From the sequence record OU343168.1: a stretch of DNA of 64,000 nt, one strand, 5' to 3'. Numbering within the stretch: position 1 is the stretch's first letter; the number at the start of each line of letters is the position of its first letter. A program made the position numbers and the translations under genes. The notes under the pieces are model-generated. The model was given only the letters and a program-made list of their open reading frames with translations, was not told the origin of the DNA and ran no database searches. Positions 5,819-57,471 of this stretch are shown one piece after another.

Positions 5819-8287
5819 ATGTTTATATTAACTAAATTGATCCTAGAGAATTACATTCCTCTGTTAAGCAGTGGAATCAAACGGGTAGAGTTGGATCTGA
5901 ATCATTTGGTTAACCTGTTGATCGCTCAGAACGGTGTCGGGAAAACCAGTATCCTCCGAGAAGCCAATCCCCTGGCTCCTGAAAATGCCAACTACCGCGG
6001 TATTGGACGCAAGTACGTGGAGATTAAACGGGGATTGGACCATTTCGTTTTGGATTCTAAAACAGACTTAGGCAATGGTCACAGTTTCAAGTTTAACGGG
6101 AAAGAGTTAAACAAGAATGGAACCTTTACGGAACAGAAGGACTTGGTATGGATCCATTTCCGGTTAGACAGTACTATCAGCCGTATTCTGTCCGGGCTTA
6201 AACCCAACAGTCTGTTTTCAGCGATGCCAGTGGCTCAACGTAAAGACTTCTTTATGTTCATCTACCCGAATGACACGAGTTACGCCTTAGGGGTCTTTAA
6301 CAAGCTTAAGACAGAACGTCGTGAACTGGCGGCTGCAATTAAGAACCAAGTCATGCGGTATACAGAAGAGAGTGCTAAACTCAAGCAGATCACTGAATGT
6401 GGTCCGGAAGAGCTGGAACGTCGAGTTAAGACGATTGAGACTGAACTGAGGGAGTCCCTGTTGGTACGAGGGGGGTTGGAGCAGGTGAAAGTAGACCCTG
6501 AGCTCCAAAGTAAGATTGATACCTTCAAACGCTTGGCTGAGCAGATGACATTGAACCGAGTCAGCGGGTTCTTTGAGACCGAGGCTGAACTCAGACAGGG
6601 AATCGAAACAGTTCAAGCTATCTTGAGTGTTCACGAAGGCCAAGCCACTGCCATTCAAATGGTTATCAGTGAGCACGTAGGGGTTTTGGAAGGAATGGAG
6701 GAGATCAAAGAAGATCCCTTTGTCTTCCATCATCAAGCGGAACAACTCAAGGTGGAACTCACTGCTCTCCGGGAAGAATACAAACAACATGGGGTGCTAT
6801 TGGGTAATTACCCTTTGTTCAACGATGACGCCTATGACTTTACCGGTTTGGAATTGGTGTACGATGCCTTGGTGGCTCAATTGCGTCGGGTGGTGAATGC
6901 CAGTACTCCTGAGTTAACCGGAGGGCGGTATAAAGAGTATACCGTCAAACTGGAGCAAACCCGTAATCAACTGAGGGCCTCTAAGAATGAGCTGGACACT
7001 CTCACCCACCAGTTGAAACATTATGATGCCATGGAACTGGTGACTTGTCCGGAATGTACCCATGAATTCAAGGTCGGGATTACCGCGAATGAACTGCGCG
7101 CAGCACGGGTTAAAGCGGAAGCCCTTAAGTTGAGTGTGACTAAACTGGAGCGGGATGTTGAAACCCTGGAAAGATTAGTCGAACAGGACAGTGAGTGGTA
7201 CCACAGCATGTTAGCCCTACATCAGTTCTGCCGGATGAATGGTGATGTTAAGTGCCTTCCTGAACTGATTAAAGCATACGACATGGGTAAGTCGGATACC
7301 AACATCCTTTTAAACGCCCTCAGGGCCTTCATGGGGCGTTTTAACTGTAAGAGACGTATCGACGCCCTACTAGAAGAAGAAAAGCTCTTAAACACGCGTA
7401 TAGGGCTTTTACAGAAGGATTCGGTATTAGACATCGCCACCTACTTAAAGAGTCTGGAACACGACCTGGAAGTGGAGAACAGTCGTATTGGTTTCTACCG
7501 CCGGCGTATTGAACAGCTTACAAGGAACCTAAAGACCATCCACACCTACACCCGAGACCTGGAAACCCTCCGCTGTCTTAAAGACGAGATCTTCAATGGG
7601 CTGGAACAACAAGGGTTGGTGGAACTGCGTAAACGGGTTGATGAACGGATTCATTTGCTAACGGATGAGAAGGATGAATACCTCGCCTCCATTATCAAAA
7701 GCCGTTCGTTGAGTGCAGTTGTCACGTCTATTTCGGAAGACATTGATCGTTTAAAACGCCGTCTGAAGATTGTGGATGGGTTAATGAACGGTCTGTGTCC
7801 GAATAAGGGGTTGATCGGTAAGCTGATGACGGATTTCATCAAGACCTATTGTGCCAATATGAATGCGGTGATTCAATCAGTGTGGAACACCACCCTGTTT
7901 GTTAAACCCTGCCATAAGGACAACGGGGATTTGAACTGGAAGTTCCCGGTGGTTACCGGTGATGATGAGCCCACGCCAGATGTCAGTGATTGCAGTTTGG
8001 GTGAAGCAGGTATCATTGACTTTGCGTTCCGTTATGTGGCCATTCGTTACCACGGTAACTTCCCTCTGATGCTGGATGAGGTGGGTACCACCTTCGATGA
8101 AATCAAACGCGGTCGTTTCTTCAATTTCATTCACGAGTTAACCACCCAGAAGGACGCTAAACAACTCTTCATGATTAGCCATTACATTACTCAATACGGA
8201 ATGTTCACCAATCCGAATGTAATTGCAATGTGTTATGAAGGGTTGAGTTTACCGGGTGAAGTCAATCAACACAGTGTTATCAATTAA
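5819..8287 (+). CDS. sbcC: SbcC/Rad50-like SMC ATPase
   Basis: Walker A AQNGVGKT, long coiled coils, central zinc hook CPEC, signature SLGE, Walker B LMLDE, H-loop ISH. Confidence 0.9.
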   Translation: MFILTKLILENYIPLLSSGIKRVELDLNHLVNLLIAQNGVGKTSILREANPLAPENANYRGIGRKYVEIKRGLDHFVLDSKTDLGNGHSFKFNGKELNKNGTFTEQKDLVWIHFRLDSTISRILSGLKPNSLFSAMPVAQRKDFFMFIYPNDTSYALGVFNKLKTERRELAAAIKNQVMRYTEESAKLKQITECGPEELERRVKTIETELRESLLVRGGLEQVKVDPELQSKIDTFKRLAEQMTLNRVSGFFETEAELRQGIETVQAILSVHEGQATAIQMVISEHVGVLEGMEEIKEDPFVFHHQAEQLKVELTALREEYKQHGVLLGNYPLFNDDAYDFTGLELVYDALVAQLRRVVNASTPELTGGRYKEYTVKLEQTRNQLRASKNELDTLTHQLKHYDAMELVTCPECTHEFKVGITANELRAARVKAEALKLSVTKLERDVETLERLVEQDSEWYHSMLALHQFCRMNGDVKCLPELIKAYDMGKSDTNILLNALRAFMGRFNCKRRIDALLEEEKLLNTRIGLLQKDSVLDIATYLKSLEHDLEVENSRIGFYRRRIEQLTRNLKTIHTYTRDLETLRCLKDEIFNGLEQQGLVELRKRVDERIHLLTDEKDEYLASIIKSRSLSAVVTSISEDIDRLKRRLKIVDGLMNGLCPNKGLIGKLMTDFIKTYCANMNAVIQSVWNTTLFVKPCHKDNGDLNWKFPVVTGDDEPTPDVSDCSLGEAGIIDFAFRYVAIRYHGNFPLMLDEVGTTFDEIKRGRFFNFIHELTTQKDAKQLFMISHYITQYGMFTNPNVIAMCYEGLSLPGEVNQHSVIN

Positions 8288-8291
8288 TTTT

Positions 8292-8311
8292 AAACCTACA
8301 TTATTCATTTG
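8292..8311 (+). promoter_or_regulatory. Early promoter motif AAACCTACATTAT-N4-TTG
   Basis: One of ten intergenic copies; resembles phiKZ early TATATTAC. Confidence 0.75.
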
Positions 8312-8326
8312 CAAGGAATACTTCTA

Positions 8327-8620
8327 ATGAACGTTCAACTCCCACGATCGGTTACCCTGGATGCCTATCTTCAACCGGACGGTACACTTATGCTGGGGCC
8401 GGGTCAGGCTAAAGTAACCATTAACTACCATTCGGATCCTCAAGAATCCATTAATGCGTGCATTGTCTTTGGAGGGGCAATGCAAGCGATTGTGACTTTT
8501 GATGAAACCGGTCAGACCCCTGTGAGTTATACGCTGTTGAATCCAGGGGGTGATTACACCGTTGAGCAGTCGGTTCTTAACATCTTGTCCTATTTCGGAG
8601 TCAGCGCTCCGATGAGCTAG
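8327..8620 (+). CDS. Hypothetical protein, first gene behind early promoter 8292
   Basis: SD AAGGA then ATG at 8327 (track start is an upstream TTG). Confidence 0.7.
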   Translation: MNVQLPRSVTLDAYLQPDGTLMLGPGQAKVTINYHSDPQESINACIVFGGAMQAIVTFDETGQTPVSYTLLNPGGDYTVEQSVLNILSYFGVSAPMS

Positions 8621-8632
8621 GAGTCATGAGTC

Positions 8633-9073
8633 ATGAACAAAGCTGAAGTGATAGAACGGTATCGCGAACTGGTCGAAGACCTCGCCCTCCCGCCGCATCA
8701 GGTGATCCTGTCGGCGGGTGCCGCCTTGGTGGTAATGGGCATACGAGAGGAAACAAGTGACCTCGATGTGGATGTCCCTACCAGTGTGTTCAACTGGGCG
8801 AGTAATAAGTTCGGGGTTATCGAGAACGAAACCGTGAATAAACGGGTTCAATACACCCCCCTGGTCGATCTCCATGAATACGACGAGAACACAGGGGTGG
8901 TTTGTATTGAGGGGGTGTGGTTGTACAGCCCTACGGAGTTACTGAAACAGAAACACTGGTTAACGAAACTGGCTGATCGAACGGACGTTAAGACCCAACA
9001 GGATCACCGTGATATCCGCCAACTGGAAATTCTCACTCAGTCTCAACCATTCACTGCACGCGCATTGTTGTAA
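8633..9073 (+). CDS. Minimal Pol-beta-superfamily nucleotidyltransferase (AbiEii/MenT/DUF6036-like)
   Basis: hSAGAAL-x3-G-x-R-x2-T-x-DLD (D43, D45), likely third acid in VDLHE, C-terminal K...QD..DI helix. Confidence 0.65.
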   Translation: MNKAEVIERYRELVEDLALPPHQVILSAGAALVVMGIREETSDLDVDVPTSVFNWASNKFGVIENETVNKRVQYTPLVDLHEYDENTGVVCIEGVWLYSPTELLKQKHWLTKLADRTDVKTQQDHRDIRQLEILTQSQPFTARALL

Positions 9074-9087
9074 GGTTAGGTTACGGT

Positions 9088-9582
9088 ATGTTTTACAGTC
9101 AATTGGAAGTGGTAGAAGCCGTTCAACGGTTCTCTGAGGCTCATAACACCCCATTGGATAAGATCGCTATTGGCGGGGGTGGGGCTATCGTGCTCATGGG
9201 GGGTCGTGAAACCACCTATGATTTGAACATTTGGGTGGAGAGTCCGTTCTTTGAACGCATTGCTGAAACCCAGAACGCTCTCCTCAGTCCTATGAGAGAC
9301 AATGTGTTCCACATTGAAACGACTATTGATTCCATGGATCAAACCGATCACGTCACCACACGCCGCCATTACTGGGTGCGTAAACGTAACCTCTATTTCC
9401 CCACTGTTCCTGTTAAGCTGGATCAATGTCCTGAAGTCTACATCTTCGATGCGATGTCACTGTTGATTCAGAAACGCGGGAGTTACAGTCAACCTGAACG
9501 AGGACTCCGTCGTAAACAGGATTACAGCGACATCTGTTTCTTGAATGCGTTGCTAAAGGAAGAACACAAAGTCAGGGCTTAA
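9088..9582 (+). CDS. Paralogous nucleotidyltransferase-like protein with degenerate active site (D-x-N)
   Basis: GGGGAIVLMGGRETTYDLN aligns with the previous gene but has Asn at the second catalytic Asp; C-terminal KQDYSDI. Confidence 0.55.
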   Translation: MFYSQLEVVEAVQRFSEAHNTPLDKIAIGGGGAIVLMGGRETTYDLNIWVESPFFERIAETQNALLSPMRDNVFHIETTIDSMDQTDHVTTRRHYWVRKRNLYFPTVPVKLDQCPEVYIFDAMSLLIQKRGSYSQPERGLRRKQDYSDICFLNALLKEEHKVRA

Positions 9583-9592
9583 CCTTAGGACA

Positions 9593-9618
9593 GTACCAGG
9601 GGATCACTCCCCTGGTAC
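9593..9618 (+). terminator. Hairpin ending the NTase unit
   Basis: GTACCAGGGGA/TCCCCTGGTAC. Confidence 0.65.
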
Positions 9619-9650
9619 GTCTTCCTCTTTATACGGTTTAGGAGATCACA

Positions 9651-11621
9651 ATGGGTAAACACTCGCCTGTTGAACGGATTAAATACCTCCATGAACAACT
9701 GACGTATCACGCCCATCTCTATTTCGTCGAGAACCGGAACGAGATCTCTGATGAAGCGTATGATGTGTTGGAGCAAGAACTCAATGAGTTGTACGACCGA
9801 TACCCTGAAATAGCGGCTAAGTTCGATTTCTATAATCGACCCGTTCCTATTCATGAACCCTCCGGGGAAGCCATTCAACCAATACGGTTCGAGGAACCCA
9901 TGCTCAGCTTGAAGAAAGCCTTGAGTGTGGAGGAAGCGGACACGTTCCTGTTGAAGTTCCCGGATGGTACGAACTTCTTTTACGAAGAGAAACTGGATGG
10001 GTTGGCCCTGGAGCTGGTGTATGAACAGGGACAACTGGTCAGTATGAGTACCCGGGGGTCTGGATTAGTCGGGGAAGATGTGACGCATTCCATAGTTCTC
10101 TTCGATGAAGCTACACTTCCTCGTACCTTAAGGACACTCCCTGACCGCCATAAACCCCAGGGGGATCGATTGGTTATTCGGGGTGAAGGGTACATCAGTC
10201 TGGAACGCTTCGATTCTCTTAATGAAACAGGGGGTAAACGGTCCAATCCCCGTAATGCCGTGAGTGGGTGGGTGCGGTCCCTCCCTCAGAACCAACGGGA
10301 GGATATCCGAGGAACGCTGTACTTCGCGGCGTATTACGCCAGTGATCGATTGGGGACGAAAGCCTACTCCGAATTGAGACAGGTTCTCTTAGGTTTAGGG
10401 TTTGGTGTTCCTGAATCTAGGGATTGGATTGCAATCTCAGAGAACCGGAGGGGGAACATTCGTCCGGTGGACGGGATTGTGATTAAAGTCGACAAGTTCA
10501 AGGAACAAGACGCCAGTGGAAATGGGAGTAAATTCCCTCACTGGGCAATTGCTTACAAGTTCCCTGCGGAAGAAGCGTTGGCCCAGGTTGAGGGCTGTAT
10601 CTGGAATACCTCTCGGTTTGGTCGGGTAGTACCGGTGGTCCAGTATACCCCTGTAACGATCCAAGGGGTTATCTGTCAGTCTGCGTCGTTAGATAACTAC
10701 GGTTCGTTTATGGACTTAGGGTTATCAATCGGGGATCGGATTGTTATTACCCGGAACAACGATGTGATCCCTCGGTTGAACCGAGTGGAGGAGTGTGGGG
10801 AAGGAGACCTTCTAGAAGCGCCTACAAGCTGTCCTAGCTGCGATTCTCTCCTAGAGGTAGTGGTGGGTAGGGACAGTTCCGAACTCGTCTGTAACAACGT
10901 CGCAGAGTGCCCTGCGCAGATTGTTATGCGGTGCGTAACGACGTTTGATAAGTTTGGACTGGATGTAGACGGTTTAGGACCCGTGAAGGTCAGTGAATTG
11001 GTTGAGAAAGGATGGGTTAAACAACCGGCTGATATACTTACCCTTCTGGAAGACATTAAGGATCAATGCCTCACCCCGACGACTCGAAGAGGTTTGGAGC
11101 GTGTCCTTCAGGAACCCGTTCCTTTACATCGCTTCTTAAAGGCGTTGGGTATCCCGGATATTGGGATCACTTTGGCTAAACGCCTAGCCAACGCCATCCC
11201 TGAAGGGAAGATCGAAGAATCCCTTACCAATCCTAAGTTCCTACAAAGTGTACGAGGGGTTTCAGTGGGGATTGCTTACCGGGTCGTGAACGCGTTCGAC
11301 TCCCCGGTCTTTAAGGACAACTTCCACGCCCTAAAAGGTTTGTTAACTCTCCAGTACACCGGAACGCAGGACGACTGCATTAAAGTCTGTATTACCGGCA
11401 ACATTGGACCTTCCCGAGGAGAACTCTGTAACCTGTTCGCTAAGGAAGGGATTGAACTCAGTGATCGGCTTACCCAGGACTGTGCCTTCGTCATTGTGGG
11501 TGATCGTCCTGGTAAATCGAAACTGTTAATTGCAACCGAATCGGGTATACCTATGCTAATTGCAAAGGATTATTCGAGCATTGGCTCCCTCATTCAGTTC
11601 ATTAAAGGACACCGAGAATGA
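9651..11621 (+). CDS. ligA: NAD-dependent DNA ligase
   Basis: N-terminal Ia domain (YFVEN..ISDEAYD), KLDG adenylation motif, DGIVIK, AIAYKF, OB fold, Zn finger CPSC...CNNVAEC, HhH motifs, BRCT (CITG). Confidence 0.95.
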   Translation: MGKHSPVERIKYLHEQLTYHAHLYFVENRNEISDEAYDVLEQELNELYDRYPEIAAKFDFYNRPVPIHEPSGEAIQPIRFEEPMLSLKKALSVEEADTFLLKFPDGTNFFYEEKLDGLALELVYEQGQLVSMSTRGSGLVGEDVTHSIVLFDEATLPRTLRTLPDRHKPQGDRLVIRGEGYISLERFDSLNETGGKRSNPRNAVSGWVRSLPQNQREDIRGTLYFAAYYASDRLGTKAYSELRQVLLGLGFGVPESRDWIAISENRRGNIRPVDGIVIKVDKFKEQDASGNGSKFPHWAIAYKFPAEEALAQVEGCIWNTSRFGRVVPVVQYTPVTIQGVICQSASLDNYGSFMDLGLSIGDRIVITRNNDVIPRLNRVEECGEGDLLEAPTSCPSCDSLLEVVVGRDSSELVCNNVAECPAQIVMRCVTTFDKFGLDVDGLGPVKVSELVEKGWVKQPADILTLLEDIKDQCLTPTTRRGLERVLQEPVPLHRFLKALGIPDIGITLAKRLANAIPEGKIEESLTNPKFLQSVRGVSVGIAYRVVNAFDSPVFKDNFHALKGLLTLQYTGTQDDCIKVCITGNIGPSRGELCNLFAKEGIELSDRLTQDCAFVIVGDRPGKSKLLIATESGIPMLIAKDYSSIGSLIQFIKGHRE

Positions 11622-13005: not shown

Positions 13006-13497
13006 ATGTCCAAAACAAAGAGGAATGACCGATATGTCATTTATACCGATGGGAGTGCGTTAGGGAATCCAGGTCCGGGCGGTTACGGTGTTTACGCTAA
13101 ATACAAAGGGGAAGAATTCTCCCTGAGTAAAGGGTATTACAAAACCACTAACAACCGCCAAGAACTCATGAGTGTGATTGCAGCCCTGGAAGAGTTTGGT
13201 CCTAATATCAAAGTGGACATCTTCACTGACTCCCAATACGTCATTAAGTGTGCTACTAAATGGATGAGAGGATGGATACGGAACAACTGGATGGGGTATA
13301 ACTCTGGGCAACCGGTTAAGAACCGCGATCTGTTGGAAGTCCTCAATGAACTCTTGAAGAAGAATAAGGTAAAGTTCCATTGGGTTAAAGGTCACTCTGG
13401 GGATGAAGGGAATGAAAAGGCAGACCAATTAGCCAAGGATGCTGCCAATAATCCGGAAGCCCACGATATGGAATACATGAAAGTCTTAGGGTTCTAA
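13006..13497 (+). CDS. rnhA: Ribonuclease HI
   Basis: YTDGSALGNPGPGG, TTNNRQEL, TDSQYV, WVKGHSG..GNEKADQLA: all catalytic DEDD residues present. Confidence 0.95.
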   Translation: MSKTKRNDRYVIYTDGSALGNPGPGGYGVYAKYKGEEFSLSKGYYKTTNNRQELMSVIAALEEFGPNIKVDIFTDSQYVIKCATKWMRGWIRNNWMGYNSGQPVKNRDLLEVLNELLKKNKVKFHWVKGHSGDEGNEKADQLAKDAANNPEAHDMEYMKVLGF

Positions 13498-13522
13498 TCA
13501 ATCAACCGTGGAGATTCACGCT

Positions 13523-14761
13523 ATGAAAAGCTTTATTGATGTATCAGTAGTAGAAGATGGGGGTAAACAGTTCCTCTTCGGTATTACTGCGAATCAAAAG
13601 ACAGGACGACCCGAAGTCGTAGGATATACCGATCCTGATTATTTCAGAGAGGGTGCTGACCGTGTGTTTGAACAGCTTATCCGGGGAGAACAACGAAAGG
13701 AAGCGAATATTAAGCTCCAGTTGGCCTTTATTAAGGCGGTCAAGGAACATCCCGGTAAACAACTGCAACTCACGCTTTGCTACAGCGCAAATGGACCGTC
13801 AGCTGGAGAATTTTATTGGGTGGAGGATCGGTGTTATACAGTTGACGGAGCGTCCTTCCTATCGAAAGAACCAGTGTGCATCTATCATAAGAACTGTCTG
13901 GATGGTACTGCGGCAGCTTGGGCGGTAAGACGTGCACTCCCCTTGGTTGAATTGGTGGCTATGAGCTATCATGATGATCCGTACGAACTCTTTGGCCCGG
14001 GGTTGGAGTATCTACAAGGGAGAATGGTCTATTGTGTTGATTTCAGTTTTAAGAAAGCAGTTGTAGAAGCGATTGCTAATCTACCGGATACAGTCTTGAT
14101 AATCTTGGATCATCACGAGAGTGCTCAACGGGAACTGGGTGAACTCGTCGTTGTTTATTCCGGGAAATCAACGCTGGGTGATCGGGTTGAGATTATCATC
14201 GATATGACACGTTCAGGCGCTAAGTTGACGTACGACTACTTCCACCCTCAACAACCGACGCCTCCGGGTATTCTGGCAGTACAAGATCGGGATCTGTGGA
14301 AATGGGAGTACGAAGGCAGTAAGGAATGGACCGCAGCCGCCTTTGGGTATCCCCTCACCGTTGAGAGTTTCGATAAACTGATTCATCGGGATTACCAAGA
14401 CGTGGTAGAAGAAGGTCGTACCGTCCTTCGTAAGCAGGAATTGGATGTTGAGAAACTGCTCCCGAGTGCGCGGCCTTACACGTTGGAGGGTTACAACTGC
14501 TTGATTGTTAATGCCAGTTATTTCCACGCCAGTGATGTAGGGGATAAACTGAAGGGTCGAGACGGTATTGACTTTGTAGTCACTTACATGGATGGTAAGG
14601 ATAGCCGTATCTTCTCTCTACGGGGTAAGGATAAAGTGAATCTAGCGGAAGTGGCTGAACGTTTTGGAGGAGGCGGCCACCCTAACGCAGCGGGGTTTTC
14701 ACTCTCCTACGACGATCCCCGTTTCTCCCAGTCACACCTGTTACTGTATTCCGGTACTTAA
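13523..14761 (+). CDS. DHH/DHHA1 phosphoesterase with an extra N-terminal domain of about 110 aa
   Basis: IYHKNCLDG, VYCVDFS, ILDHH, SGA, QDRDLW, SLR, FGGGGHPNAAGF; SD GGAG before ATG 13523. Confidence 0.85.
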   Translation: MKSFIDVSVVEDGGKQFLFGITANQKTGRPEVVGYTDPDYFREGADRVFEQLIRGEQRKEANIKLQLAFIKAVKEHPGKQLQLTLCYSANGPSAGEFYWVEDRCYTVDGASFLSKEPVCIYHKNCLDGTAAAWAVRRALPLVELVAMSYHDDPYELFGPGLEYLQGRMVYCVDFSFKKAVVEAIANLPDTVLIILDHHESAQRELGELVVVYSGKSTLGDRVEIIIDMTRSGAKLTYDYFHPQQPTPPGILAVQDRDLWKWEYEGSKEWTAAAFGYPLTVESFDKLIHRDYQDVVEEGRTVLRKQELDVEKLLPSARPYTLEGYNCLIVNASYFHASDVGDKLKGRDGIDFVVTYMDGKDSRIFSLRGKDKVNLAEVAERFGGGGHPNAAGFSLSYDDPRFSQSHLLLYSGT

Positions 14762-15010: not shown

Positions 15011-15436
15011 ATGAATAATTACGGGTATGTGGATGTGTCCTTGGTAGGACCTGAAGTAGAGGAAATCTTTGGCTTGCTCTTGGAGTGTGGTATTGCACCG
15101 GCTGCGGAGTATAACCTGCATTGTACCCTGATGTACGATGAACAGGCAGAAGAACCGCTGGTGAAACTGAATCCTGATGCGAAATTCACCGCCTACGTGA
15201 CAGGGATTGATGTACTGGGAGATGGATTGGTGTTTAACCTTACCAGCAAAGACCTCGCTGATGAACACCGCAGGTTGAAAGACGGTGGATATACCCATTC
15301 CTTTGATGCCTTCTTACCGCACATGTCTGTCACCTATGACTTCGATGAATACGACATGTTGAAAGTGAAGCAAGCTTTCGCAACCTGGGGTGGTCGACAA
15401 CTCACCTTCAGTAAAGAATCGTTCGGAACCAAATAA
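15011..15436 (+). CDS. acb1: 2H phosphoesterase, Acb1 (T4 gp57B)-like anti-CBASS nuclease candidate
   Basis: Two HxT/S motifs (H37-C-T39, H104-M-S106); GYV start, L-x2-L-x-S-x2-L-x3-H and G-Y-THSFD-x-F-x-PH match my recollection of T4 57B. Confidence 0.75.
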   Translation: MNNYGYVDVSLVGPEVEEIFGLLLECGIAPAAEYNLHCTLMYDEQAEEPLVKLNPDAKFTAYVTGIDVLGDGLVFNLTSKDLADEHRRLKDGGYTHSFDAFLPHMSVTYDFDEYDMLKVKQAFATWGGRQLTFSKESFGTK

Positions 15437-18527: not shown

Positions 18528-18608
18528 GACTCCCCAACCACCCCACCCTGTAAAGGAGTTGGGGTGGTGAGTATTTATTTCTTTTTAGTTTAAAACGTAT
18601 TTATTCTC

Positions 18609-18628
18609 AAACCTACATTATTCATATG
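18609..18628 (+). promoter_or_regulatory. Early promoter motif AAACCTACATTAT-N4-ATG
   Basis: Intergenic, after a hairpin. Confidence 0.75.
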
Positions 18629-18672: not shown

Positions 18673-19077
18673 ATGATAGACCGTTCGTTGAAAACTGACC
18701 GAGACGATGAATGCACCGAGGGGCCGATCTCGCAGTTTGTCGACTACGTTACGAACAAAGACCATATACGGAACCATGAGAAATACTTGATGAGTCGTTG
18801 TGAGCGTGGGACTGAATCGGGACTGGAGGCGTGGATTAAATTCCAGTACGTCTTCGGGAGAGCGTTCGGTGAAGGGTACATCGGGAATCTCAAGTTCAGG
18901 GTCTATTACGATTTCGATACAGGGTTCGAGTTGTTTTACGTTCCCTTTACGTCCGGTCTCCGTCTGGAAAGACGGGGGGAAACACCCATGGTGTTCAGCA
19001 CGGACCCCAATCAACCGGGTAAAGAGAAGGAGTTCATCAAATTCCTGGTTGAACATCAGGCTGATCGTCAGAAATAA
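18673..19077 (+). CDS. Hypothetical early protein
   Basis: SD AAGGAG; behind promoter 18609. Confidence 0.7.
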   Translation: MIDRSLKTDRDDECTEGPISQFVDYVTNKDHIRNHEKYLMSRCERGTESGLEAWIKFQYVFGRAFGEGYIGNLKFRVYYDFDTGFELFYVPFTSGLRLERRGETPMVFSTDPNQPGKEKEFIKFLVEHQADRQK

Positions 19078-20396: not shown

Positions 20397-20879
20397 ATGA
20401 CAATTCGTTTAGACATTCTCCACCGGTTTCATCAGATTGAGGGGATACGGGAGACCATCATCGACTTCTCTACCCGACTGTTCGACTACGAGTTTGCCTT
20501 GTCGGGAATACCCGCCCACCTCAAAGACCAATACGAAGTCCCAAACTCGGCAAACGCTTATGATGAGCTCTTCGCGGATACGGATCTCTGTATTCTGGCC
20601 TTGGATGAGGATACGCCCATCGGGATGCTGCTGTCCGCCTACGAACGCCCCAATGCCATCGAAGTCTTGTTTGTAGAAGAGAAGTACCGGAATAAGCACG
20701 TCGGTAAGGTTCTGGTTGAACAATTCCACCGCATTAAGCTGGGTCATCCGATCTTTGTCACCGTAATGGCGTGGAATCCCTCCGCGCGTCGCTTCTACGA
20801 ACGGAATGGTTTTATCTTTAAGGAAGATAGCCAACATGGAGAACAGGCCTTAAAGGGTGTACGTTCTCTCCTGGATTAA
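20397..20879 (+). CDS. GNAT family acetyltransferase
   Basis: LFVEEKYRNKHVGKVLV acetyl-CoA motif, N-x2-A-x2-FYERNGF. Confidence 0.85.
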   Translation: MTIRLDILHRFHQIEGIRETIIDFSTRLFDYEFALSGIPAHLKDQYEVPNSANAYDELFADTDLCILALDEDTPIGMLLSAYERPNAIEVLFVEEKYRNKHVGKVLVEQFHRIKLGHPIFVTVMAWNPSARRFYERNGFIFKEDSQHGEQALKGVRSLLD

Positions 20880-39596: not shown

Positions 39597-39702
39597 AGAA
39601 GTAGATAGAGGGTTCGGTCATTAGACCATAAAATTGGTAAATAAAATAGTACCCAAACCCATATTCTTCACTTACCTGGTTATTTAACTTGAGGTTCTTT
39701 TC

Positions 39703-39722
39703 AAACCTACATAATCAGGGTG
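39703..39722 (+). promoter_or_regulatory. Early promoter motif AAACCTACATAAT-N4-GTG
   Basis: Start of the plus-strand early island. Confidence 0.7.
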
Positions 39723-57443: not shown

Positions 57444-57451
57444 GATTTTTC

Positions 57452-57471
57452 AGACCTACATTATTCGTTTG
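57452..57471 (+). promoter_or_regulatory. Early promoter motif AGACCTACATTAT-N4-TTG
   Basis: In the 49-bp divergent gap. Confidence 0.7.

What the first reader, a model, noticed from the sequence alone, without database searches (positions are those of the whole stretch)
8327..9618. Early three-gene unit: small ORF, intact nucleotidyltransferase and degenerate paralogue
Seen: an early promoter, a 97-aa ORF, two adjacent paralogues and a terminator. Gene 8633 has G-A-A-L-x3-G-x-R-x2-T-x-D43-L-D45 and a later VDLHE. Gene 9088 keeps the scaffold but has D45-L-N47 and no acid at the matching later strand. Both end in K...QD..DI. Established: this pattern fits minimal Pol-beta NTases of the AbiEii/MenT/DUF6036 type, several of which modify tRNA ends. 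Inference: an enzyme plus pseudo-enzyme pair (heteromer or regulated toxin/antitoxin-like) acting early, e.g. on tRNA, protein or signalling nucleotides for host takeover or counter-defence. I know of no characterised lytic-phage system with this layout.
Basis: partly seen in the sequence, partly recalled or inferred. Interest (0 to 1): 0.75.

Follow-up and report, generated by a model that had tools for sequence, protein, structure and literature searches.

The report
Jumbo-phage nucleotidyltransferase with conserved inactive-looking twin
A giant Pseudomonas phage of the EL group carries, in one small operon, an apparently active minimal nucleotide-transferring enzyme next to an old, well-conserved copy that has lost key catalytic residues. 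The two belong to an uncharacterised protein family seen so far only in giant phages, and its target is unknown.

Summary
The window is Pseudomonas phage phiRU (Elvirus), and the three ORFs are EL ORF119, ORF120 and ORF121.

**The two NTase genes**
- gp120 (8633-9073) and gp121 (9088-9582) are true paralogues. Both match PHROG 12854, and the profile-profile probability is 99.6%.
- Both give confident AlphaFold models (pLDDT 95). Their only meaningful structural neighbours are Pol-beta-type nucleotidyltransferases: TM1012, MenT1, ANT(2'')-Ia, JHP933 and viral poly(A) polymerases.
- gp120 keeps the family's conserved residues: G29, R38, T41-x-D43-x-D45, H81, K107 and D124-x-x-D127.
- gp121 carries a coordinated replacement set (N, W, W/Y, R), a beta-hairpin insertion and conserved motifs of its own.

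**Conservation of the pair**
- The pair is syntenic in 15 distinct EL-like jumbo-phage lineages.
- All three genes have dN/dS between 0.04 and 0.27, so gp121 is a maintained protein and not decay.

**Unit boundaries**
- A recurrent promoter-like motif lies upstream and a positionally conserved hairpin lies downstream.
- "Early" timing is unproven.

**What is not shown**
- Heteromer formation, toxin/antitoxin behaviour and the substrate were not tested.
- Three EL-like lineages carry a gp120 orthologue without the catalytic aspartates.
- Other jumbo phages carry single copies, and some of those are fused to GNAT or NUDIX domains.

Verdict: a new, uncharacterised variant of a known enzyme kind, of moderate interest.

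The parts
8288..8305 (+). Promoter-like motif (core ACCTACAT[T/A]AT), 22 nt upstream of the gp119 ATG
   Evidence: Annotated 'putative phage promoter' in the EL record. There are 4 intergenic + strand copies in the window against 0.03-0.1 expected, and alignment of the four sites shows a conserved block. A related motif lies upstream of the gp119 homologue in 15 of 18 EL-like loci. The temporal class is not established.
8327..8620 (+). gp119 homologue: 97 aa, acidic (pI 4.05), function unknown (phrog_16812)
   Evidence: ORF. PHROG hit at 2.6e-7. No hit in Pfam, NCBIfam, PADLOC or PDB. A homologue follows the SbcC-like gene in every EL-like locus examined. dN/dS is 0.15-0.31. It is absent next to family members outside the EL-like clade.
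8633..9073 (+). gp120 homologue: 146-aa minimal Pol-beta-fold nucleotidyltransferase with the complete family active-site set (G29, G36, R38, T41, D43, D45, D47, D79, H81, K107, D124, D127)
   Evidence: phrog_12854 at 1.6e-47. AF2 pLDDT 95, pTM 0.87. The top Foldseek PDB hits are all NTases. Column conservation in 144 relatives is. dN/dS is 0.07-0.24.
9088..9582 (+). gp121 homologue: 164-aa paralogue with the NTase fold. The second metal-ligand Asp is replaced by Asn47, the next Asp by Trp49, and the third-acid and His columns by Trp and Arg. It has a long beta-hairpin insertion and keeps the C-terminal K...D-x-x-D.
   Evidence: phrog_12854 at 3.8e-46. AF2 pLDDT 94.6. Foldseek PDB hits are NTases. 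The replacement set is conserved in the clade. dN/dS is 0.04-0.27.
9587..9623 (+). Stem-loop directly after the gp121 stop codon, followed by a T-rich stretch: likely intrinsic terminator closing the unit
   Evidence: dG -30.8 kcal/mol, z -3.7. A strong hairpin (dG -17 to -31) sits at the same position after the last NTase gene in all 18 EL-like loci, although the sequences have diverged.

Best explanation
The three genes form one transcription unit, from a phage promoter-like motif to a hairpin terminator. The unit sits in a variable slot between the SbcC-like and NAD-ligase genes of EL-like jumbo phages.

**gp120.** It is most likely an active, metal-dependent minimal nucleotidyltransferase of a jumbo-phage-specific branch of the DUF6036 / AbiEii-MenT-like Pol-beta NTases. 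It would bind an NTP through the D43/D45 metal site and the C-terminal K107 and D124-x-x-D127 helices, and transfer the NMP to a hydroxyl acceptor. By structural analogy with MenT1, the acceptor I rank first is an RNA 3' end.

**gp121.** It is an ancient duplicate that has lost canonical catalysis but is kept under purifying selection, with a remodelled pocket and a basic beta-hairpin insertion. I infer that it binds the same nucleotide or acceptor, and that it acts as a non-catalytic partner or modulator of gp120.

**Shown:** the fold, the paralogy, the residue states, conservation of the pair, purifying selection and the unit boundaries.

**Inferred:** catalytic activity of gp120, any physical or functional coupling of the two proteins, the substrate, and the timing of expression.
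For: - **Fold.** AF2 models have pLDDT 95 and 94.6. The top PDB neighbours are exclusively Pol-beta NTases: TM1012 (TMq 0.58-0.60), MenT1 (0.55-0.57), ANT(2'')-Ia, JHP933 and mimivirus/vaccinia poly(A) polymerases.
- **Family size.** 481 cluster representatives at E<=1e-3.
- **Residue conservation.** G29 94%, R38 97%, T41 84%, D43 92%, D45 90%, H81 80%, K107 88%, D124 98%, D127 80%.
- **Match to MenT1.** These positions parallel MenT1's T39, D41, D43, K137 and D152; D41A, K137A and D152A each abolished MenT1 toxicity (PMC10435456).
- **DUF6036.** 4 of 144 relatives hit it, best E 3.8e-7.
- **The pair.** It is tandem in 15 distinct EL-like lineages, with D-x-D in gene 1 and D-x-N-x-W in gene 2.
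- **gp121-type signature.** In 21 sequences there are 7 invariant and 16 near-invariant columns, including D45, N47, W49, D71, R98, N101, Y103, K129, R130, D145 and D148.
- **Selection.** dN/dS is 0.04-0.27.
- **Dependence.** No EL-like locus has an intact D-x-D gene without a gp121-type gene. The two loci that lack gp121 have a degenerate gp120 orthologue.
- **Charge.** gp120 is acidic (pI 4.9), while gp121-type proteins are more basic (pI 6.2-9.4). This fits a division of labour between them.
- **Coupling and boundaries.** Gene gaps are 12 and 14 nt.
Against: - No activity, complex or substrate has been shown.
- gp120 and gp121 themselves hit no Pfam, NCBIfam, PADLOC or PDB sequence model.
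- Foldseek E-values against the PDB are marginal (about 1e-3), with TM scores of 0.5-0.6.
- The putative third acid, D79, is Asp in only 56% of relatives and Ser in 22%.
- gp120 orthologues in L027, L031 and L032 lack D43 and D45 but remain intact genes.
- gp121-type genes recombine independently of gp120-type genes: 80% against 37% identity in L018/L023. This argues against a tightly co-adapted interface.
- Outside the EL-like clade the enzyme occurs alone.
- gp120's net charge of -8 is not what one expects of an RNA-binding enzyme acting by itself.
Confidence: 0.5

Rival explanations
1. Small-molecule nucleotidyltransferase. gp120 would adenylylate or otherwise nucleotidylate a small cationic metabolite or antibiotic-like compound, as ANT(2'')-Ia does. 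gp121 would be a binding paralogue for the same ligand.
For: - ANT(2'')-Ia is among the best structural matches for both models.
- gp120 and most of the family are acidic: gp120 has pI 4.9, the family median is 5.8, and 75% are below pI 7.
- Family members are fused to GNAT acetyltransferase domains (P0079, P0148), and to GNAT plus NUDIX (P0134). These domains commonly act on small molecules or nucleotide derivatives.
- The P0079 fusion lies in a phiKZ-like phage contig.
Against: - TM scores to ANT(2'')-Ia (0.45-0.50) are lower than those to TM1012 and MenT1.
- There is no sequence-family link to ANT enzymes.
- GNAT domains also act on aminoacyl-tRNA and on proteins, so the fusions do not discriminate.
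- No neighbouring biosynthetic or transport genes were seen.
Confidence: 0.15
2. Independent, largely non-catalytic binders. In EL-like phages the family would work mainly by binding (sequestering or sensing) a nucleotide or other ligand. gp121, and in some lineages gp120 as well, would act as a 'sponge' or decoy, with no need for a gp120-gp121 complex.
For: - The catalytic aspartates are lost in gp121-type proteins, and in the gp120 orthologues of L027, L031 and L032. K107, R116, D124 and D127 (gp120 numbering) remain in nearly all of them.
- These degenerate genes are intact and conserved.
- gp121 swaps partners by recombination.
- An Acb1-like anti-CBASS phosphodiesterase and a DHH/DHHA1 phosphoesterase lie 4-6 kb downstream. 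Nucleotide-signal interference is therefore a theme of this genome region.
Against: - 15 of 18 EL-like lineages, and about 90% of the wider family, keep the full D-x-D site. This is hard to explain without catalysis.
- No sponge-like oligomer or known sponge fold was detected.
- The Acb1-like gene is in a different transcription unit.
Confidence: 0.15
3. Toxin-antitoxin-like regulated toxin. gp120 would be a MenT-like growth-arresting NTase. It would be held in check by the small upstream protein gp119 (as the small MenA1 protein neutralises MenT1) and/or by gp121.
For: - The order of a small acidic ORF followed by the NTase mirrors MenA1 (68 aa), which is encoded upstream of MenT1.
- Structural similarity to MenT1.
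- In EL-like loci an intact D-x-D gene never occurs without gp119 and gp121 homologues.
Against: - Single active-looking copies in Ralstonia, Pseudomonas and metagenomic jumbo phages have no gp119 or gp121 homologue and no conserved neighbour at all.
- In many EL-like loci another ORF is inserted between gp119 and gp120.
- gp119 has no detectable similarity to any PDB chain, MenA1 included.
- gp119 persists in L031 and L032, where the NTase is catalytically degenerate.
- There is no PADLOC or AbiEii Pfam hit.
Confidence: 0.1
4. DNA-end processing enzyme. The NTase would add nucleotides to DNA 3' ends, or cap them, in concert with the flanking SbcC-like nuclease subunit, NAD-dependent ligase and RNase HI during phage replication or repair.
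For: - The unit sits between the SbcC-like gene and the NAD ligase in every EL-like locus.
- In RP12-like phages the single copy lies about 2 kb from DnaB. In D6 and RVTF4 it lies next to DHFR and near ribonucleotide reductase.
- DNA polymerases beta and mu appear among the weak structural hits of gp121.
Against: - The slot between SbcC and the ligase is variable and also holds unrelated small ORFs, so adjacency may be only positional.
- The unit has its own promoter motif and terminator.
- No DNA-binding domains (HhH, 8-kDa, BRCT) are present in 146 aa.
- No neighbour is conserved across phage groups.
Confidence: 0.1

Closest known systems
MenT1 (Rv0078A) and the AbiEii/MenT (DUF1814) tRNA nucleotidyltransferase toxins
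   Same: - Pol-beta NTase core; Foldseek TMq 0.55-0.57 to 8an4/8an5.
- gp120 has T41-x-D43-x-D45, K107 and D124, which parallel MenT1's T39, D41, D43, K137 and D152.
- A small ORF lies upstream, as MenA1 does.
   Different: - No Pfam AbiEii/DUF1814 hit.
- gp120 is about 40-50 residues shorter. It has only two C-terminal helices, where MenT1 is described as having a four-helix bundle.
- It is phage-encoded and acidic.
- It is paired with a degenerate paralogue rather than with an unrelated antitoxin.
- No toxicity or tRNA activity is known.
Pfam DUF6036 (PF19502), 'nucleotidyltransferase of unknown function'
   Same: This is the only curated sequence family touched: 4 of 144 relatives hit it, best E 3.8e-7, and the P0079 fusion hits it at 18.4 bits. 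It has the same size class and the same NTase motifs.
   Different: gp120 and gp121 themselves do not reach it even at E<=1. The phage family (PHROG 12854) is a distant, separate branch. DUF6036 is itself uncharacterised.
TM1012 putative nucleotidyltransferase of Thermotoga maritima (PDB 2ewr, 2fcl)
   Same: Best overall structural match in size and topology: TMq 0.58-0.60 and TMt 0.55-0.57 for gp120, and 0.51-0.54 for gp121.
   Different: Sequence identity is 8-11%. Its function is also unknown, so the match says nothing about the substrate.
ANT(2'')-Ia aminoglycoside nucleotidyltransferase
   Same: A minimal NTase of similar length and acidic character. It is a recurrent top structural hit for both proteins.
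   Different: TM scores are only 0.45-0.50, there is no sequence-family link, and nothing in the context points to resistance.
Enzyme plus inactive-paralogue pairs (for example the vaccinia poly(A) polymerase heterodimer, or trypanosomatid deoxyhypusine synthase activated by a dead paralogue, PMC3663545)
   Same: The concept is shared: a catalytic subunit sits beside a conserved non-catalytic partner. VP55 is also a weak structural hit.
   Different: The vaccinia partner is not a paralogue. No complex has been shown here. The comparison is an analogy only.

Membership tests
Pol-beta-type nucleotidyltransferase fold superfamily | Alpha-beta-alpha-beta-alpha-beta core, with a Gly-rich turn opening helix 2 | tested here: met
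   The AF2 secondary structure of gp120 is H3-17, E25-27, H28-34 (G29 at its start), E44-48, H50-60, then strands 71-98. gp121 is equivalent. All significant Foldseek PDB neighbours are NTases.
Pol-beta-type nucleotidyltransferase fold superfamily | Two acidic metal ligands one residue apart on strand 2, plus a third acid on a neighbouring strand | tested here: inconclusive
   gp120 has D43 and D45 (92% and 90% conserved in the family), with D79 on strand 78-82. D79 is Asp in only 56% of relatives. gp121 has D45 but N47, and Trp at the third-acid column, so the feature is not met for gp121.
AbiEii / MenT (DUF1814) toxins | Match to the curated AbiEii/DUF1814 sequence model | tested here: not met
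   No Pfam, NCBIfam or PADLOC hit for gp120 or gp121 at E<=1. No AbiEii hit among the 144 relatives.
AbiEii / MenT (DUF1814) toxins | Four signature motifs: N-terminal metal-binding motifs I and II, a C-terminal Lys (III) and a C-terminal Asp (IV) | tested here: inconclusive
   Positional equivalents exist and are highly conserved: T41/D43/D45, K107 at 88% and D124 at 98%.
AbiEii / MenT (DUF1814) toxins | Cognate antitoxin encoded next to the toxin across the family; growth inhibition; tRNA 3'-end extension | not testable with these tools
   Only synteny could be examined. gp119 and gp121 accompany the enzyme only in EL-like phages, not in other carriers.
Pfam DUF6036 (PF19502) | Score above the gathering threshold (23.6 bits) against the family model | tested here: not met
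   gp120 and gp121 give no hit. A few relatives do hit (4 of 144, best E 3.8e-7). The phage family is therefore a distant relative and not a member by the curated criterion.
PHROG 12854 (phage protein family, unknown function) | Full-length match to the family profile | tested here: met
   gp120 scores 1.6e-47 over profile positions 1-136 of 137, and gp121 scores 3.8e-46 over 1-136 of 137. The fused and single-copy relatives also match.
ANT(2'')-type aminoglycoside nucleotidyltransferases | Sequence-family membership and close structural match | tested here: not met
   TMq is 0.45-0.50 with 12-14% identity. There is no sequence hit by profile search of the PDB.
Enzyme/pseudo-enzyme heteromer | Physical complex between the active and inactive paralogues | not testable with these tools
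The indirect evidence is mixed. Co-occurrence is strict in EL-like phages, but the partners recombine independently.

The most novel reading that the evidence does not exclude
EL-like jumbo phages would deploy a MenT-like nucleotidyltransferase that rewrites RNA (tRNA) 3' ends during infection, guided or restrained by a dedicated pseudo-enzyme paralogue. This would be a phage-borne counterpart of a bacterial toxin family, used either to arrest host translation or to neutralise tRNA-directed defence. It would define the function of a jumbo-phage-specific family of several hundred sequence clusters.
Probability: 0.15. Interest if true: 0.8.

Novelty: new variant of a known kind. Interest (0 to 1): 0.55.

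Why it matters
Nucleus-forming jumbo phages are models for phage cell biology and candidates for therapy, yet most of their genes have no assigned function. This work moves two 'hypothetical' EL genes, and a family of about 480 sequence clusters (PHROG 12854), into the minimal Pol-beta nucleotidyltransferases. The family has been seen only in jumbo-phage genomes and metagenomic contigs.

EL-like phages maintain an enzyme-like copy and a remodelled copy side by side. If the pair acts on RNA ends or on signalling or antibiotic-like small molecules, it would be a new phage takeover or counter-defence tool. It would also be a natural case study of how pseudo-enzymes arise and persist in viruses. 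If it is only a housekeeping accessory of replication, the finding is a useful annotation and little more.

Tried and rejected
- **Direct sequence annotation.** Pfam, NCBIfam, PADLOC and PDB phmmer/hmmsearch gave nothing for any of the three proteins.
- **Word-indexed protein searches.** They found only close EL-like relatives. The exhaustive profile search was needed to see the family.
- **The search for related loci with the broad alignment.** It failed for lack of a conserved stretch.
- **Scan of 185,579 bacterial and archaeal species genomes with a narrower alignment.** It found no relative. This rests on one peptide pattern, so it is weak evidence of absence.
- **Rosetta-stone idea.**
  - The window encodes a stand-alone GNAT (20397-20879) in another unit with the same promoter motif, and the family is fused to GNAT elsewhere.
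  - The EL GNAT shows no specific similarity to the fused GNAT domains (E 16 and 0.007). I rejected the link.
- **Conserved-neighbour search around single-copy members.** No neighbour is shared across phage groups.
- **C-terminal extensions of the longer members.** Those other than GNAT/NUDIX match no Pfam or PHROG family.
- **Literature.**
  - No paper was found on these genes, on DUF6036, or on an EL transcriptome.
  - The phiKZ transcription paper that defines the early consensus is not held.
- **gp121 as a decaying pseudogene.** Rejected: it is intact in all lineages, its dN/dS is 0.04-0.27, and it has invariant residues of its own.
- **Antisense ORFs** at 8624-8875 and 9076-9426. I treat them as spurious, because the + frames are the ones conserved and under selection.
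  - The 8-mer I searched is a substring of my script's output.
  - The search gave nothing relevant. Neither recollection is used as evidence here.
Full report
**Identity of the region**

The stretch 8300-9620 is 100% identical to Pseudomonas phage vB_PaeM_phiRU. It is 97-98.5% identical to phage EL and eight other Elvirus isolates. In the EL record the three ORFs are ORF119, ORF120 and ORF121, all 'hypothetical protein'. A 'putative phage promoter' is annotated just upstream of ORF119. The flanking genes are an SbcC-like ATPase (5819-8287) and an NAD-dependent DNA ligase (9651-11621).

**Observation check**

- The three ORFs lie exactly as described. They are separated by 12 and 14 nt, each behind a purine-rich ribosome-binding stretch.
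- All quoted residues are present.
- The pair is paralogous far beyond chance:
  - BLASTP gives E 1e-7.
  - Both match PHROG 12854 over its full length, at about 1e-47 and 1e-46.
  - A profile-profile comparison of D-x-D-type relatives from other phages against the gp121-type clade gives 99.6% probability, E 6.8e-24.

**Fold and family**

- No curated sequence library names either protein.
- An exhaustive profile search of 1.84 billion cluster representatives found 481 relatives at E<=1e-3 and 216 at E<=1e-10. Most are stand-alone proteins of 130-150 aa.
- With these as alignment, AlphaFold2 gave confident models: gp120 has pLDDT 95.0 and pTM 0.87, and gp121 has pLDDT 94.6 and pTM 0.88.
- Foldseek against the PDB returned only Pol-beta-type nucleotidyltransferases at the top for both. 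These are TM1012 (TMq up to 0.60), MenT1 (0.55-0.57), ANT(2'')-Ia, JHP933, a fungal NTase-like antigen and mimivirus/vaccinia poly(A) polymerases.
- The E-values are marginal (about 1e-3). The hit list is uniform, however, and the secondary-structure order is that of the minimal NTase fold.
- Four of 144 relatives reach Pfam DUF6036, best E 3.8e-7. I therefore read the family as a distant, phage-specific branch near DUF6036 and the AbiEii/MenT-like NTases. It is not a member of either by the curated criteria.

**Active-site conservation**

Conservation over 144 relatives, in gp120 numbering:

| Residue | Share conserved |
|---|---|
| G29 | 94% |
| G36 | 92% |
| R38 | 97% |
| T41 | 84% |
| D43 | 92% |
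| D45 | 90% |
| D47 | 65% |
| D79 | 56% Asp, 22% Ser |
| H81 | 80% |
| K107 | 88% |
| D124 | 98% |
| D127 | 80% Asp, 10% Glu |

- The set T-x-D-x-D ... K ... D parallels the MenT1 catalytic residues T39, D41, D43, K137 and D152. D41A, K137A and D152A each abolish MenT1 toxicity (PMC10435456).
- gp120 has every one of these residues.
- gp121 keeps the first Asp, the Lys and the D-x-x-D. It has Asn for the second Asp, Trp for D47, Trp for D79 and Arg for H81.

**The pair in relatives**

- IMG/VR and metagenome contigs of 184-238 kb give 15 distinct EL-like lineages. Their gp120-type proteins average about 50% identity (range 30-100%) and their gp121-type proteins about 42%.
- Every one of these lineages has the tandem pair. 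Gene 1 carries D-x-D-x-D. Gene 2, directly downstream, carries D-x-N-x-W. Two loci of one lineage (L007 and L019) have A/V-L-S-V-W instead, and one lineage has A-I-N.
- The gp121-type clade has its own conserved signature: 7 invariant and 16 near-invariant columns in 21 sequences. It includes new motifs around D71 and around R98, N101 and Y103 that the D-x-D type lacks.
- Pairwise dN/dS at informative divergence is 0.07-0.24 for gp120, 0.04-0.27 for gp121 and 0.15-0.31 for gp119.
- gp121 is therefore a maintained, neofunctionalised protein and not a decaying copy.

Two findings temper the 'obligate pair' idea.

1. **Independent recombination.** Recombination separates the two genes.
   - L018 and L023 share 80%-identical gp121-type proteins but only 37%-identical gp120-type proteins.
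   - L007 and L019 have identical gp119 and gp120 genes but diverged gp121 genes.
2. **Loss of the catalytic aspartates.** Three further EL-like lineages have a gp120 orthologue that has lost D43 and D45. They are closer to the gp120 type (33-41% mean identity) than to the gp121 type (20-22%).
   - L027 has K-x-T. It also keeps a gp121-type gene and a truncated third copy.
   - L031 (M-x-V) and L032 (M-x-N) have no gp121-type gene.

No EL-like locus combines an intact D-x-D gene with absence of gp121. With so few independent events, this is only suggestive.

**gp119 and the unit boundaries**

- gp119 is acidic (pI 4.05) and matches PHROG 16812. A homologue follows the SbcC-like gene in every EL-like locus.
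- In many loci another ORF of 126-157 aa, with no family match, is inserted between gp119 and the first NTase gene.
- gp119 is absent next to family members outside the clade. Its link to the NTases therefore rests on clade-specific synteny alone.
- The upstream motif at 8288-8305 recurs at four intergenic + strand sites in the window, against 0.03 expected. A close variant lies upstream of the gp119 homologue in 15 of 18 loci.
- The hairpin at 9587-9623 has dG -30.8 and z -3.7. It has a positional counterpart (dG -17 to -31) right after the last NTase gene in all 18 loci. This is good comparative support for a terminator.

**Timing of expression**

- phiKZ early promoters are described as an extended, well-conserved element with a T-rich part and an extended -10-like box. 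Middle promoters are described as an AAanTTACc-type motif near -24 (PMC8244752; PMC4666361).
- The EL motif has features reminiscent of both descriptions.
- I found no EL transcriptome, so 'early' stays unverified.

**Distribution and context**

- In cultured phages the family was found only in jumbo phages of 184-307 kb. These are Elvirus, Ralstonia RP12, RP31, FLC1-1B, FLC4-3B and RSF1, Pseudomonas D6 and RVTF4, Erwinia PhiEaH1 and Burkholderia SURPRISE13.
- BFVD structural neighbours add 201phi2-1, Noxifer and Phabio.
- Sampled metagenomic clusters carry no organism names.
- One pattern-based scan of 185,579 prokaryotic species genomes found none.
- Outside the EL-like clade the gene is single, keeps D-x-D, and has no neighbour conserved across phage groups.
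- Fourteen of the 150 best relatives are longer than 175 aa. Three of these carry GNAT, or GNAT plus NUDIX, domains, and one such fusion sits in a phiKZ-like contig.

**Mechanism**

*Best-supported reading (confidence about 0.5):*
- gp120 is an active metal-dependent NTase that transfers an NMP to a hydroxyl acceptor.
- gp121 is a non-catalytic paralogue that still binds a nucleotide or the acceptor and modulates or targets gp120.
- The charge contrast fits such a division of labour but does not prove it. gp120 has pI 4.9 and net charge -8. gp121-type proteins have pI 6.2-9.4, and gp121 has an Arg/Lys-rich hairpin.
- I rank an RNA 3' end as the most likely acceptor, because of the MenT1-like residue set.

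*Rivals:*

| Rival | Main support | Confidence |
|---|---|---|
| Small-molecule NTase | ANT-like hits, acidic proteins, GNAT/NUDIX fusions | 0.15 |
| Independent ligand binders or decoys | Degenerate orthologues, partner swapping | 0.15 |
| TA-like regulated toxin with gp119 as inhibitor | Gene order resembles MenA1-MenT1, but partners are missing outside the clade | 0.10 |
| DNA-end processing with SbcC and ligase | Adjacency only | 0.10 |

**Novelty and limits**

- The fold and chemistry are of a known kind.
- The family is uncharacterised, apparently jumbo-phage-specific, and unnamed in curated resources.
- The long-conserved enzyme plus remodelled-paralogue arrangement was not found described in the literature searched.
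I could not inspect model coordinates.
- I could not test activity, interaction or timing.
- One slip is declared under 'tried and rejected'. Short motifs recalled from memory during reasoning were not used as evidence.

Noticed in passing
window 15011-15436 (+): This 141-aa protein (EL ORF126) matches Pfam Acb1, the anti-CBASS 2H phosphodiesterase, above the gathering threshold (E 3.5e-11, 43.5 bits against a cut-off of 27). It is a likely counter-defence gene, and the EL record lists it as hypothetical.
   Followed up: partly
window 13508-14761 (+) and 13006-13497 (+): A DHH/DHHA1 phosphoesterase (417 aa) lies directly after RNase HI. Together with the Acb1-like gene, it forms a cluster of nucleotide- and oligonucleotide-degrading enzymes downstream of the ligase.
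   Followed up: no
L027 5001-5459, L031 4001-4447, L032 4001-4441: In three EL-like metagenomic phages the gp120 orthologue is intact but has lost both catalytic aspartates. L031 and L032 also lack any gp121-type gene. L027 carries an extra truncated third family copy.
   Followed up: partly
L018 and L023; L007 and L019: There is a recombination breakpoint between the two NTase genes. In L018/L023 the gp121-type proteins are 80% identical while the gp120-type proteins are 37% identical. In L007/L019 the gp119 and gp120 genes are identical but the gp121 genes have diverged.
   Followed up: partly
P0079 (L028 6001-6849), P0148, P0134: Family members are fused C-terminally to a GNAT acetyltransferase domain, and in P0134 also to a NUDIX hydrolase. 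P0079 lies in a phiKZ-like contig beside inner-body and tail-tube genes.
   Followed up: partly
window 18605-18622, 39699-39716, 57448-57465 (+): Three further copies of the promoter-like motif, each a short distance upstream of small + strand ORFs of mostly unknown function. The unit starting at 18673 includes a stand-alone GNAT acetyltransferase at 20397-20879.
   Followed up: partly
L008 4574-5047 and 5986-6276 (and equivalents in L010, L014-L017, L027, L031): Variable small ORFs occupy the slot between SbcC and the ligase. One of about 126-157 aa lies between gp119 and gp120. A Cys-rich ORF of 96 aa lies between gp121 and the ligase. Neither matches any Pfam family.
   Followed up: no
L002 (Pseudomonas phage vB_PQ1, PQ516283): In this 184-kb record the SbcC-like gene is annotated in five pieces, gp119 in two and gp121 in three, while gp120 is whole. 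Breaks this frequent across neighbouring genes suggest sequencing or assembly errors rather than biology.
   Followed up: no
L005 2509-3261 (phage D6), L006 3998-4735 (phage RVTF4): In these jumbo phages of about 300 kb the NTase domain carries a C-terminal extension of about 100 aa with no family match. It has Tyr in place of K107. The gene sits between dihydrofolate reductase and the large terminase.
   Followed up: no
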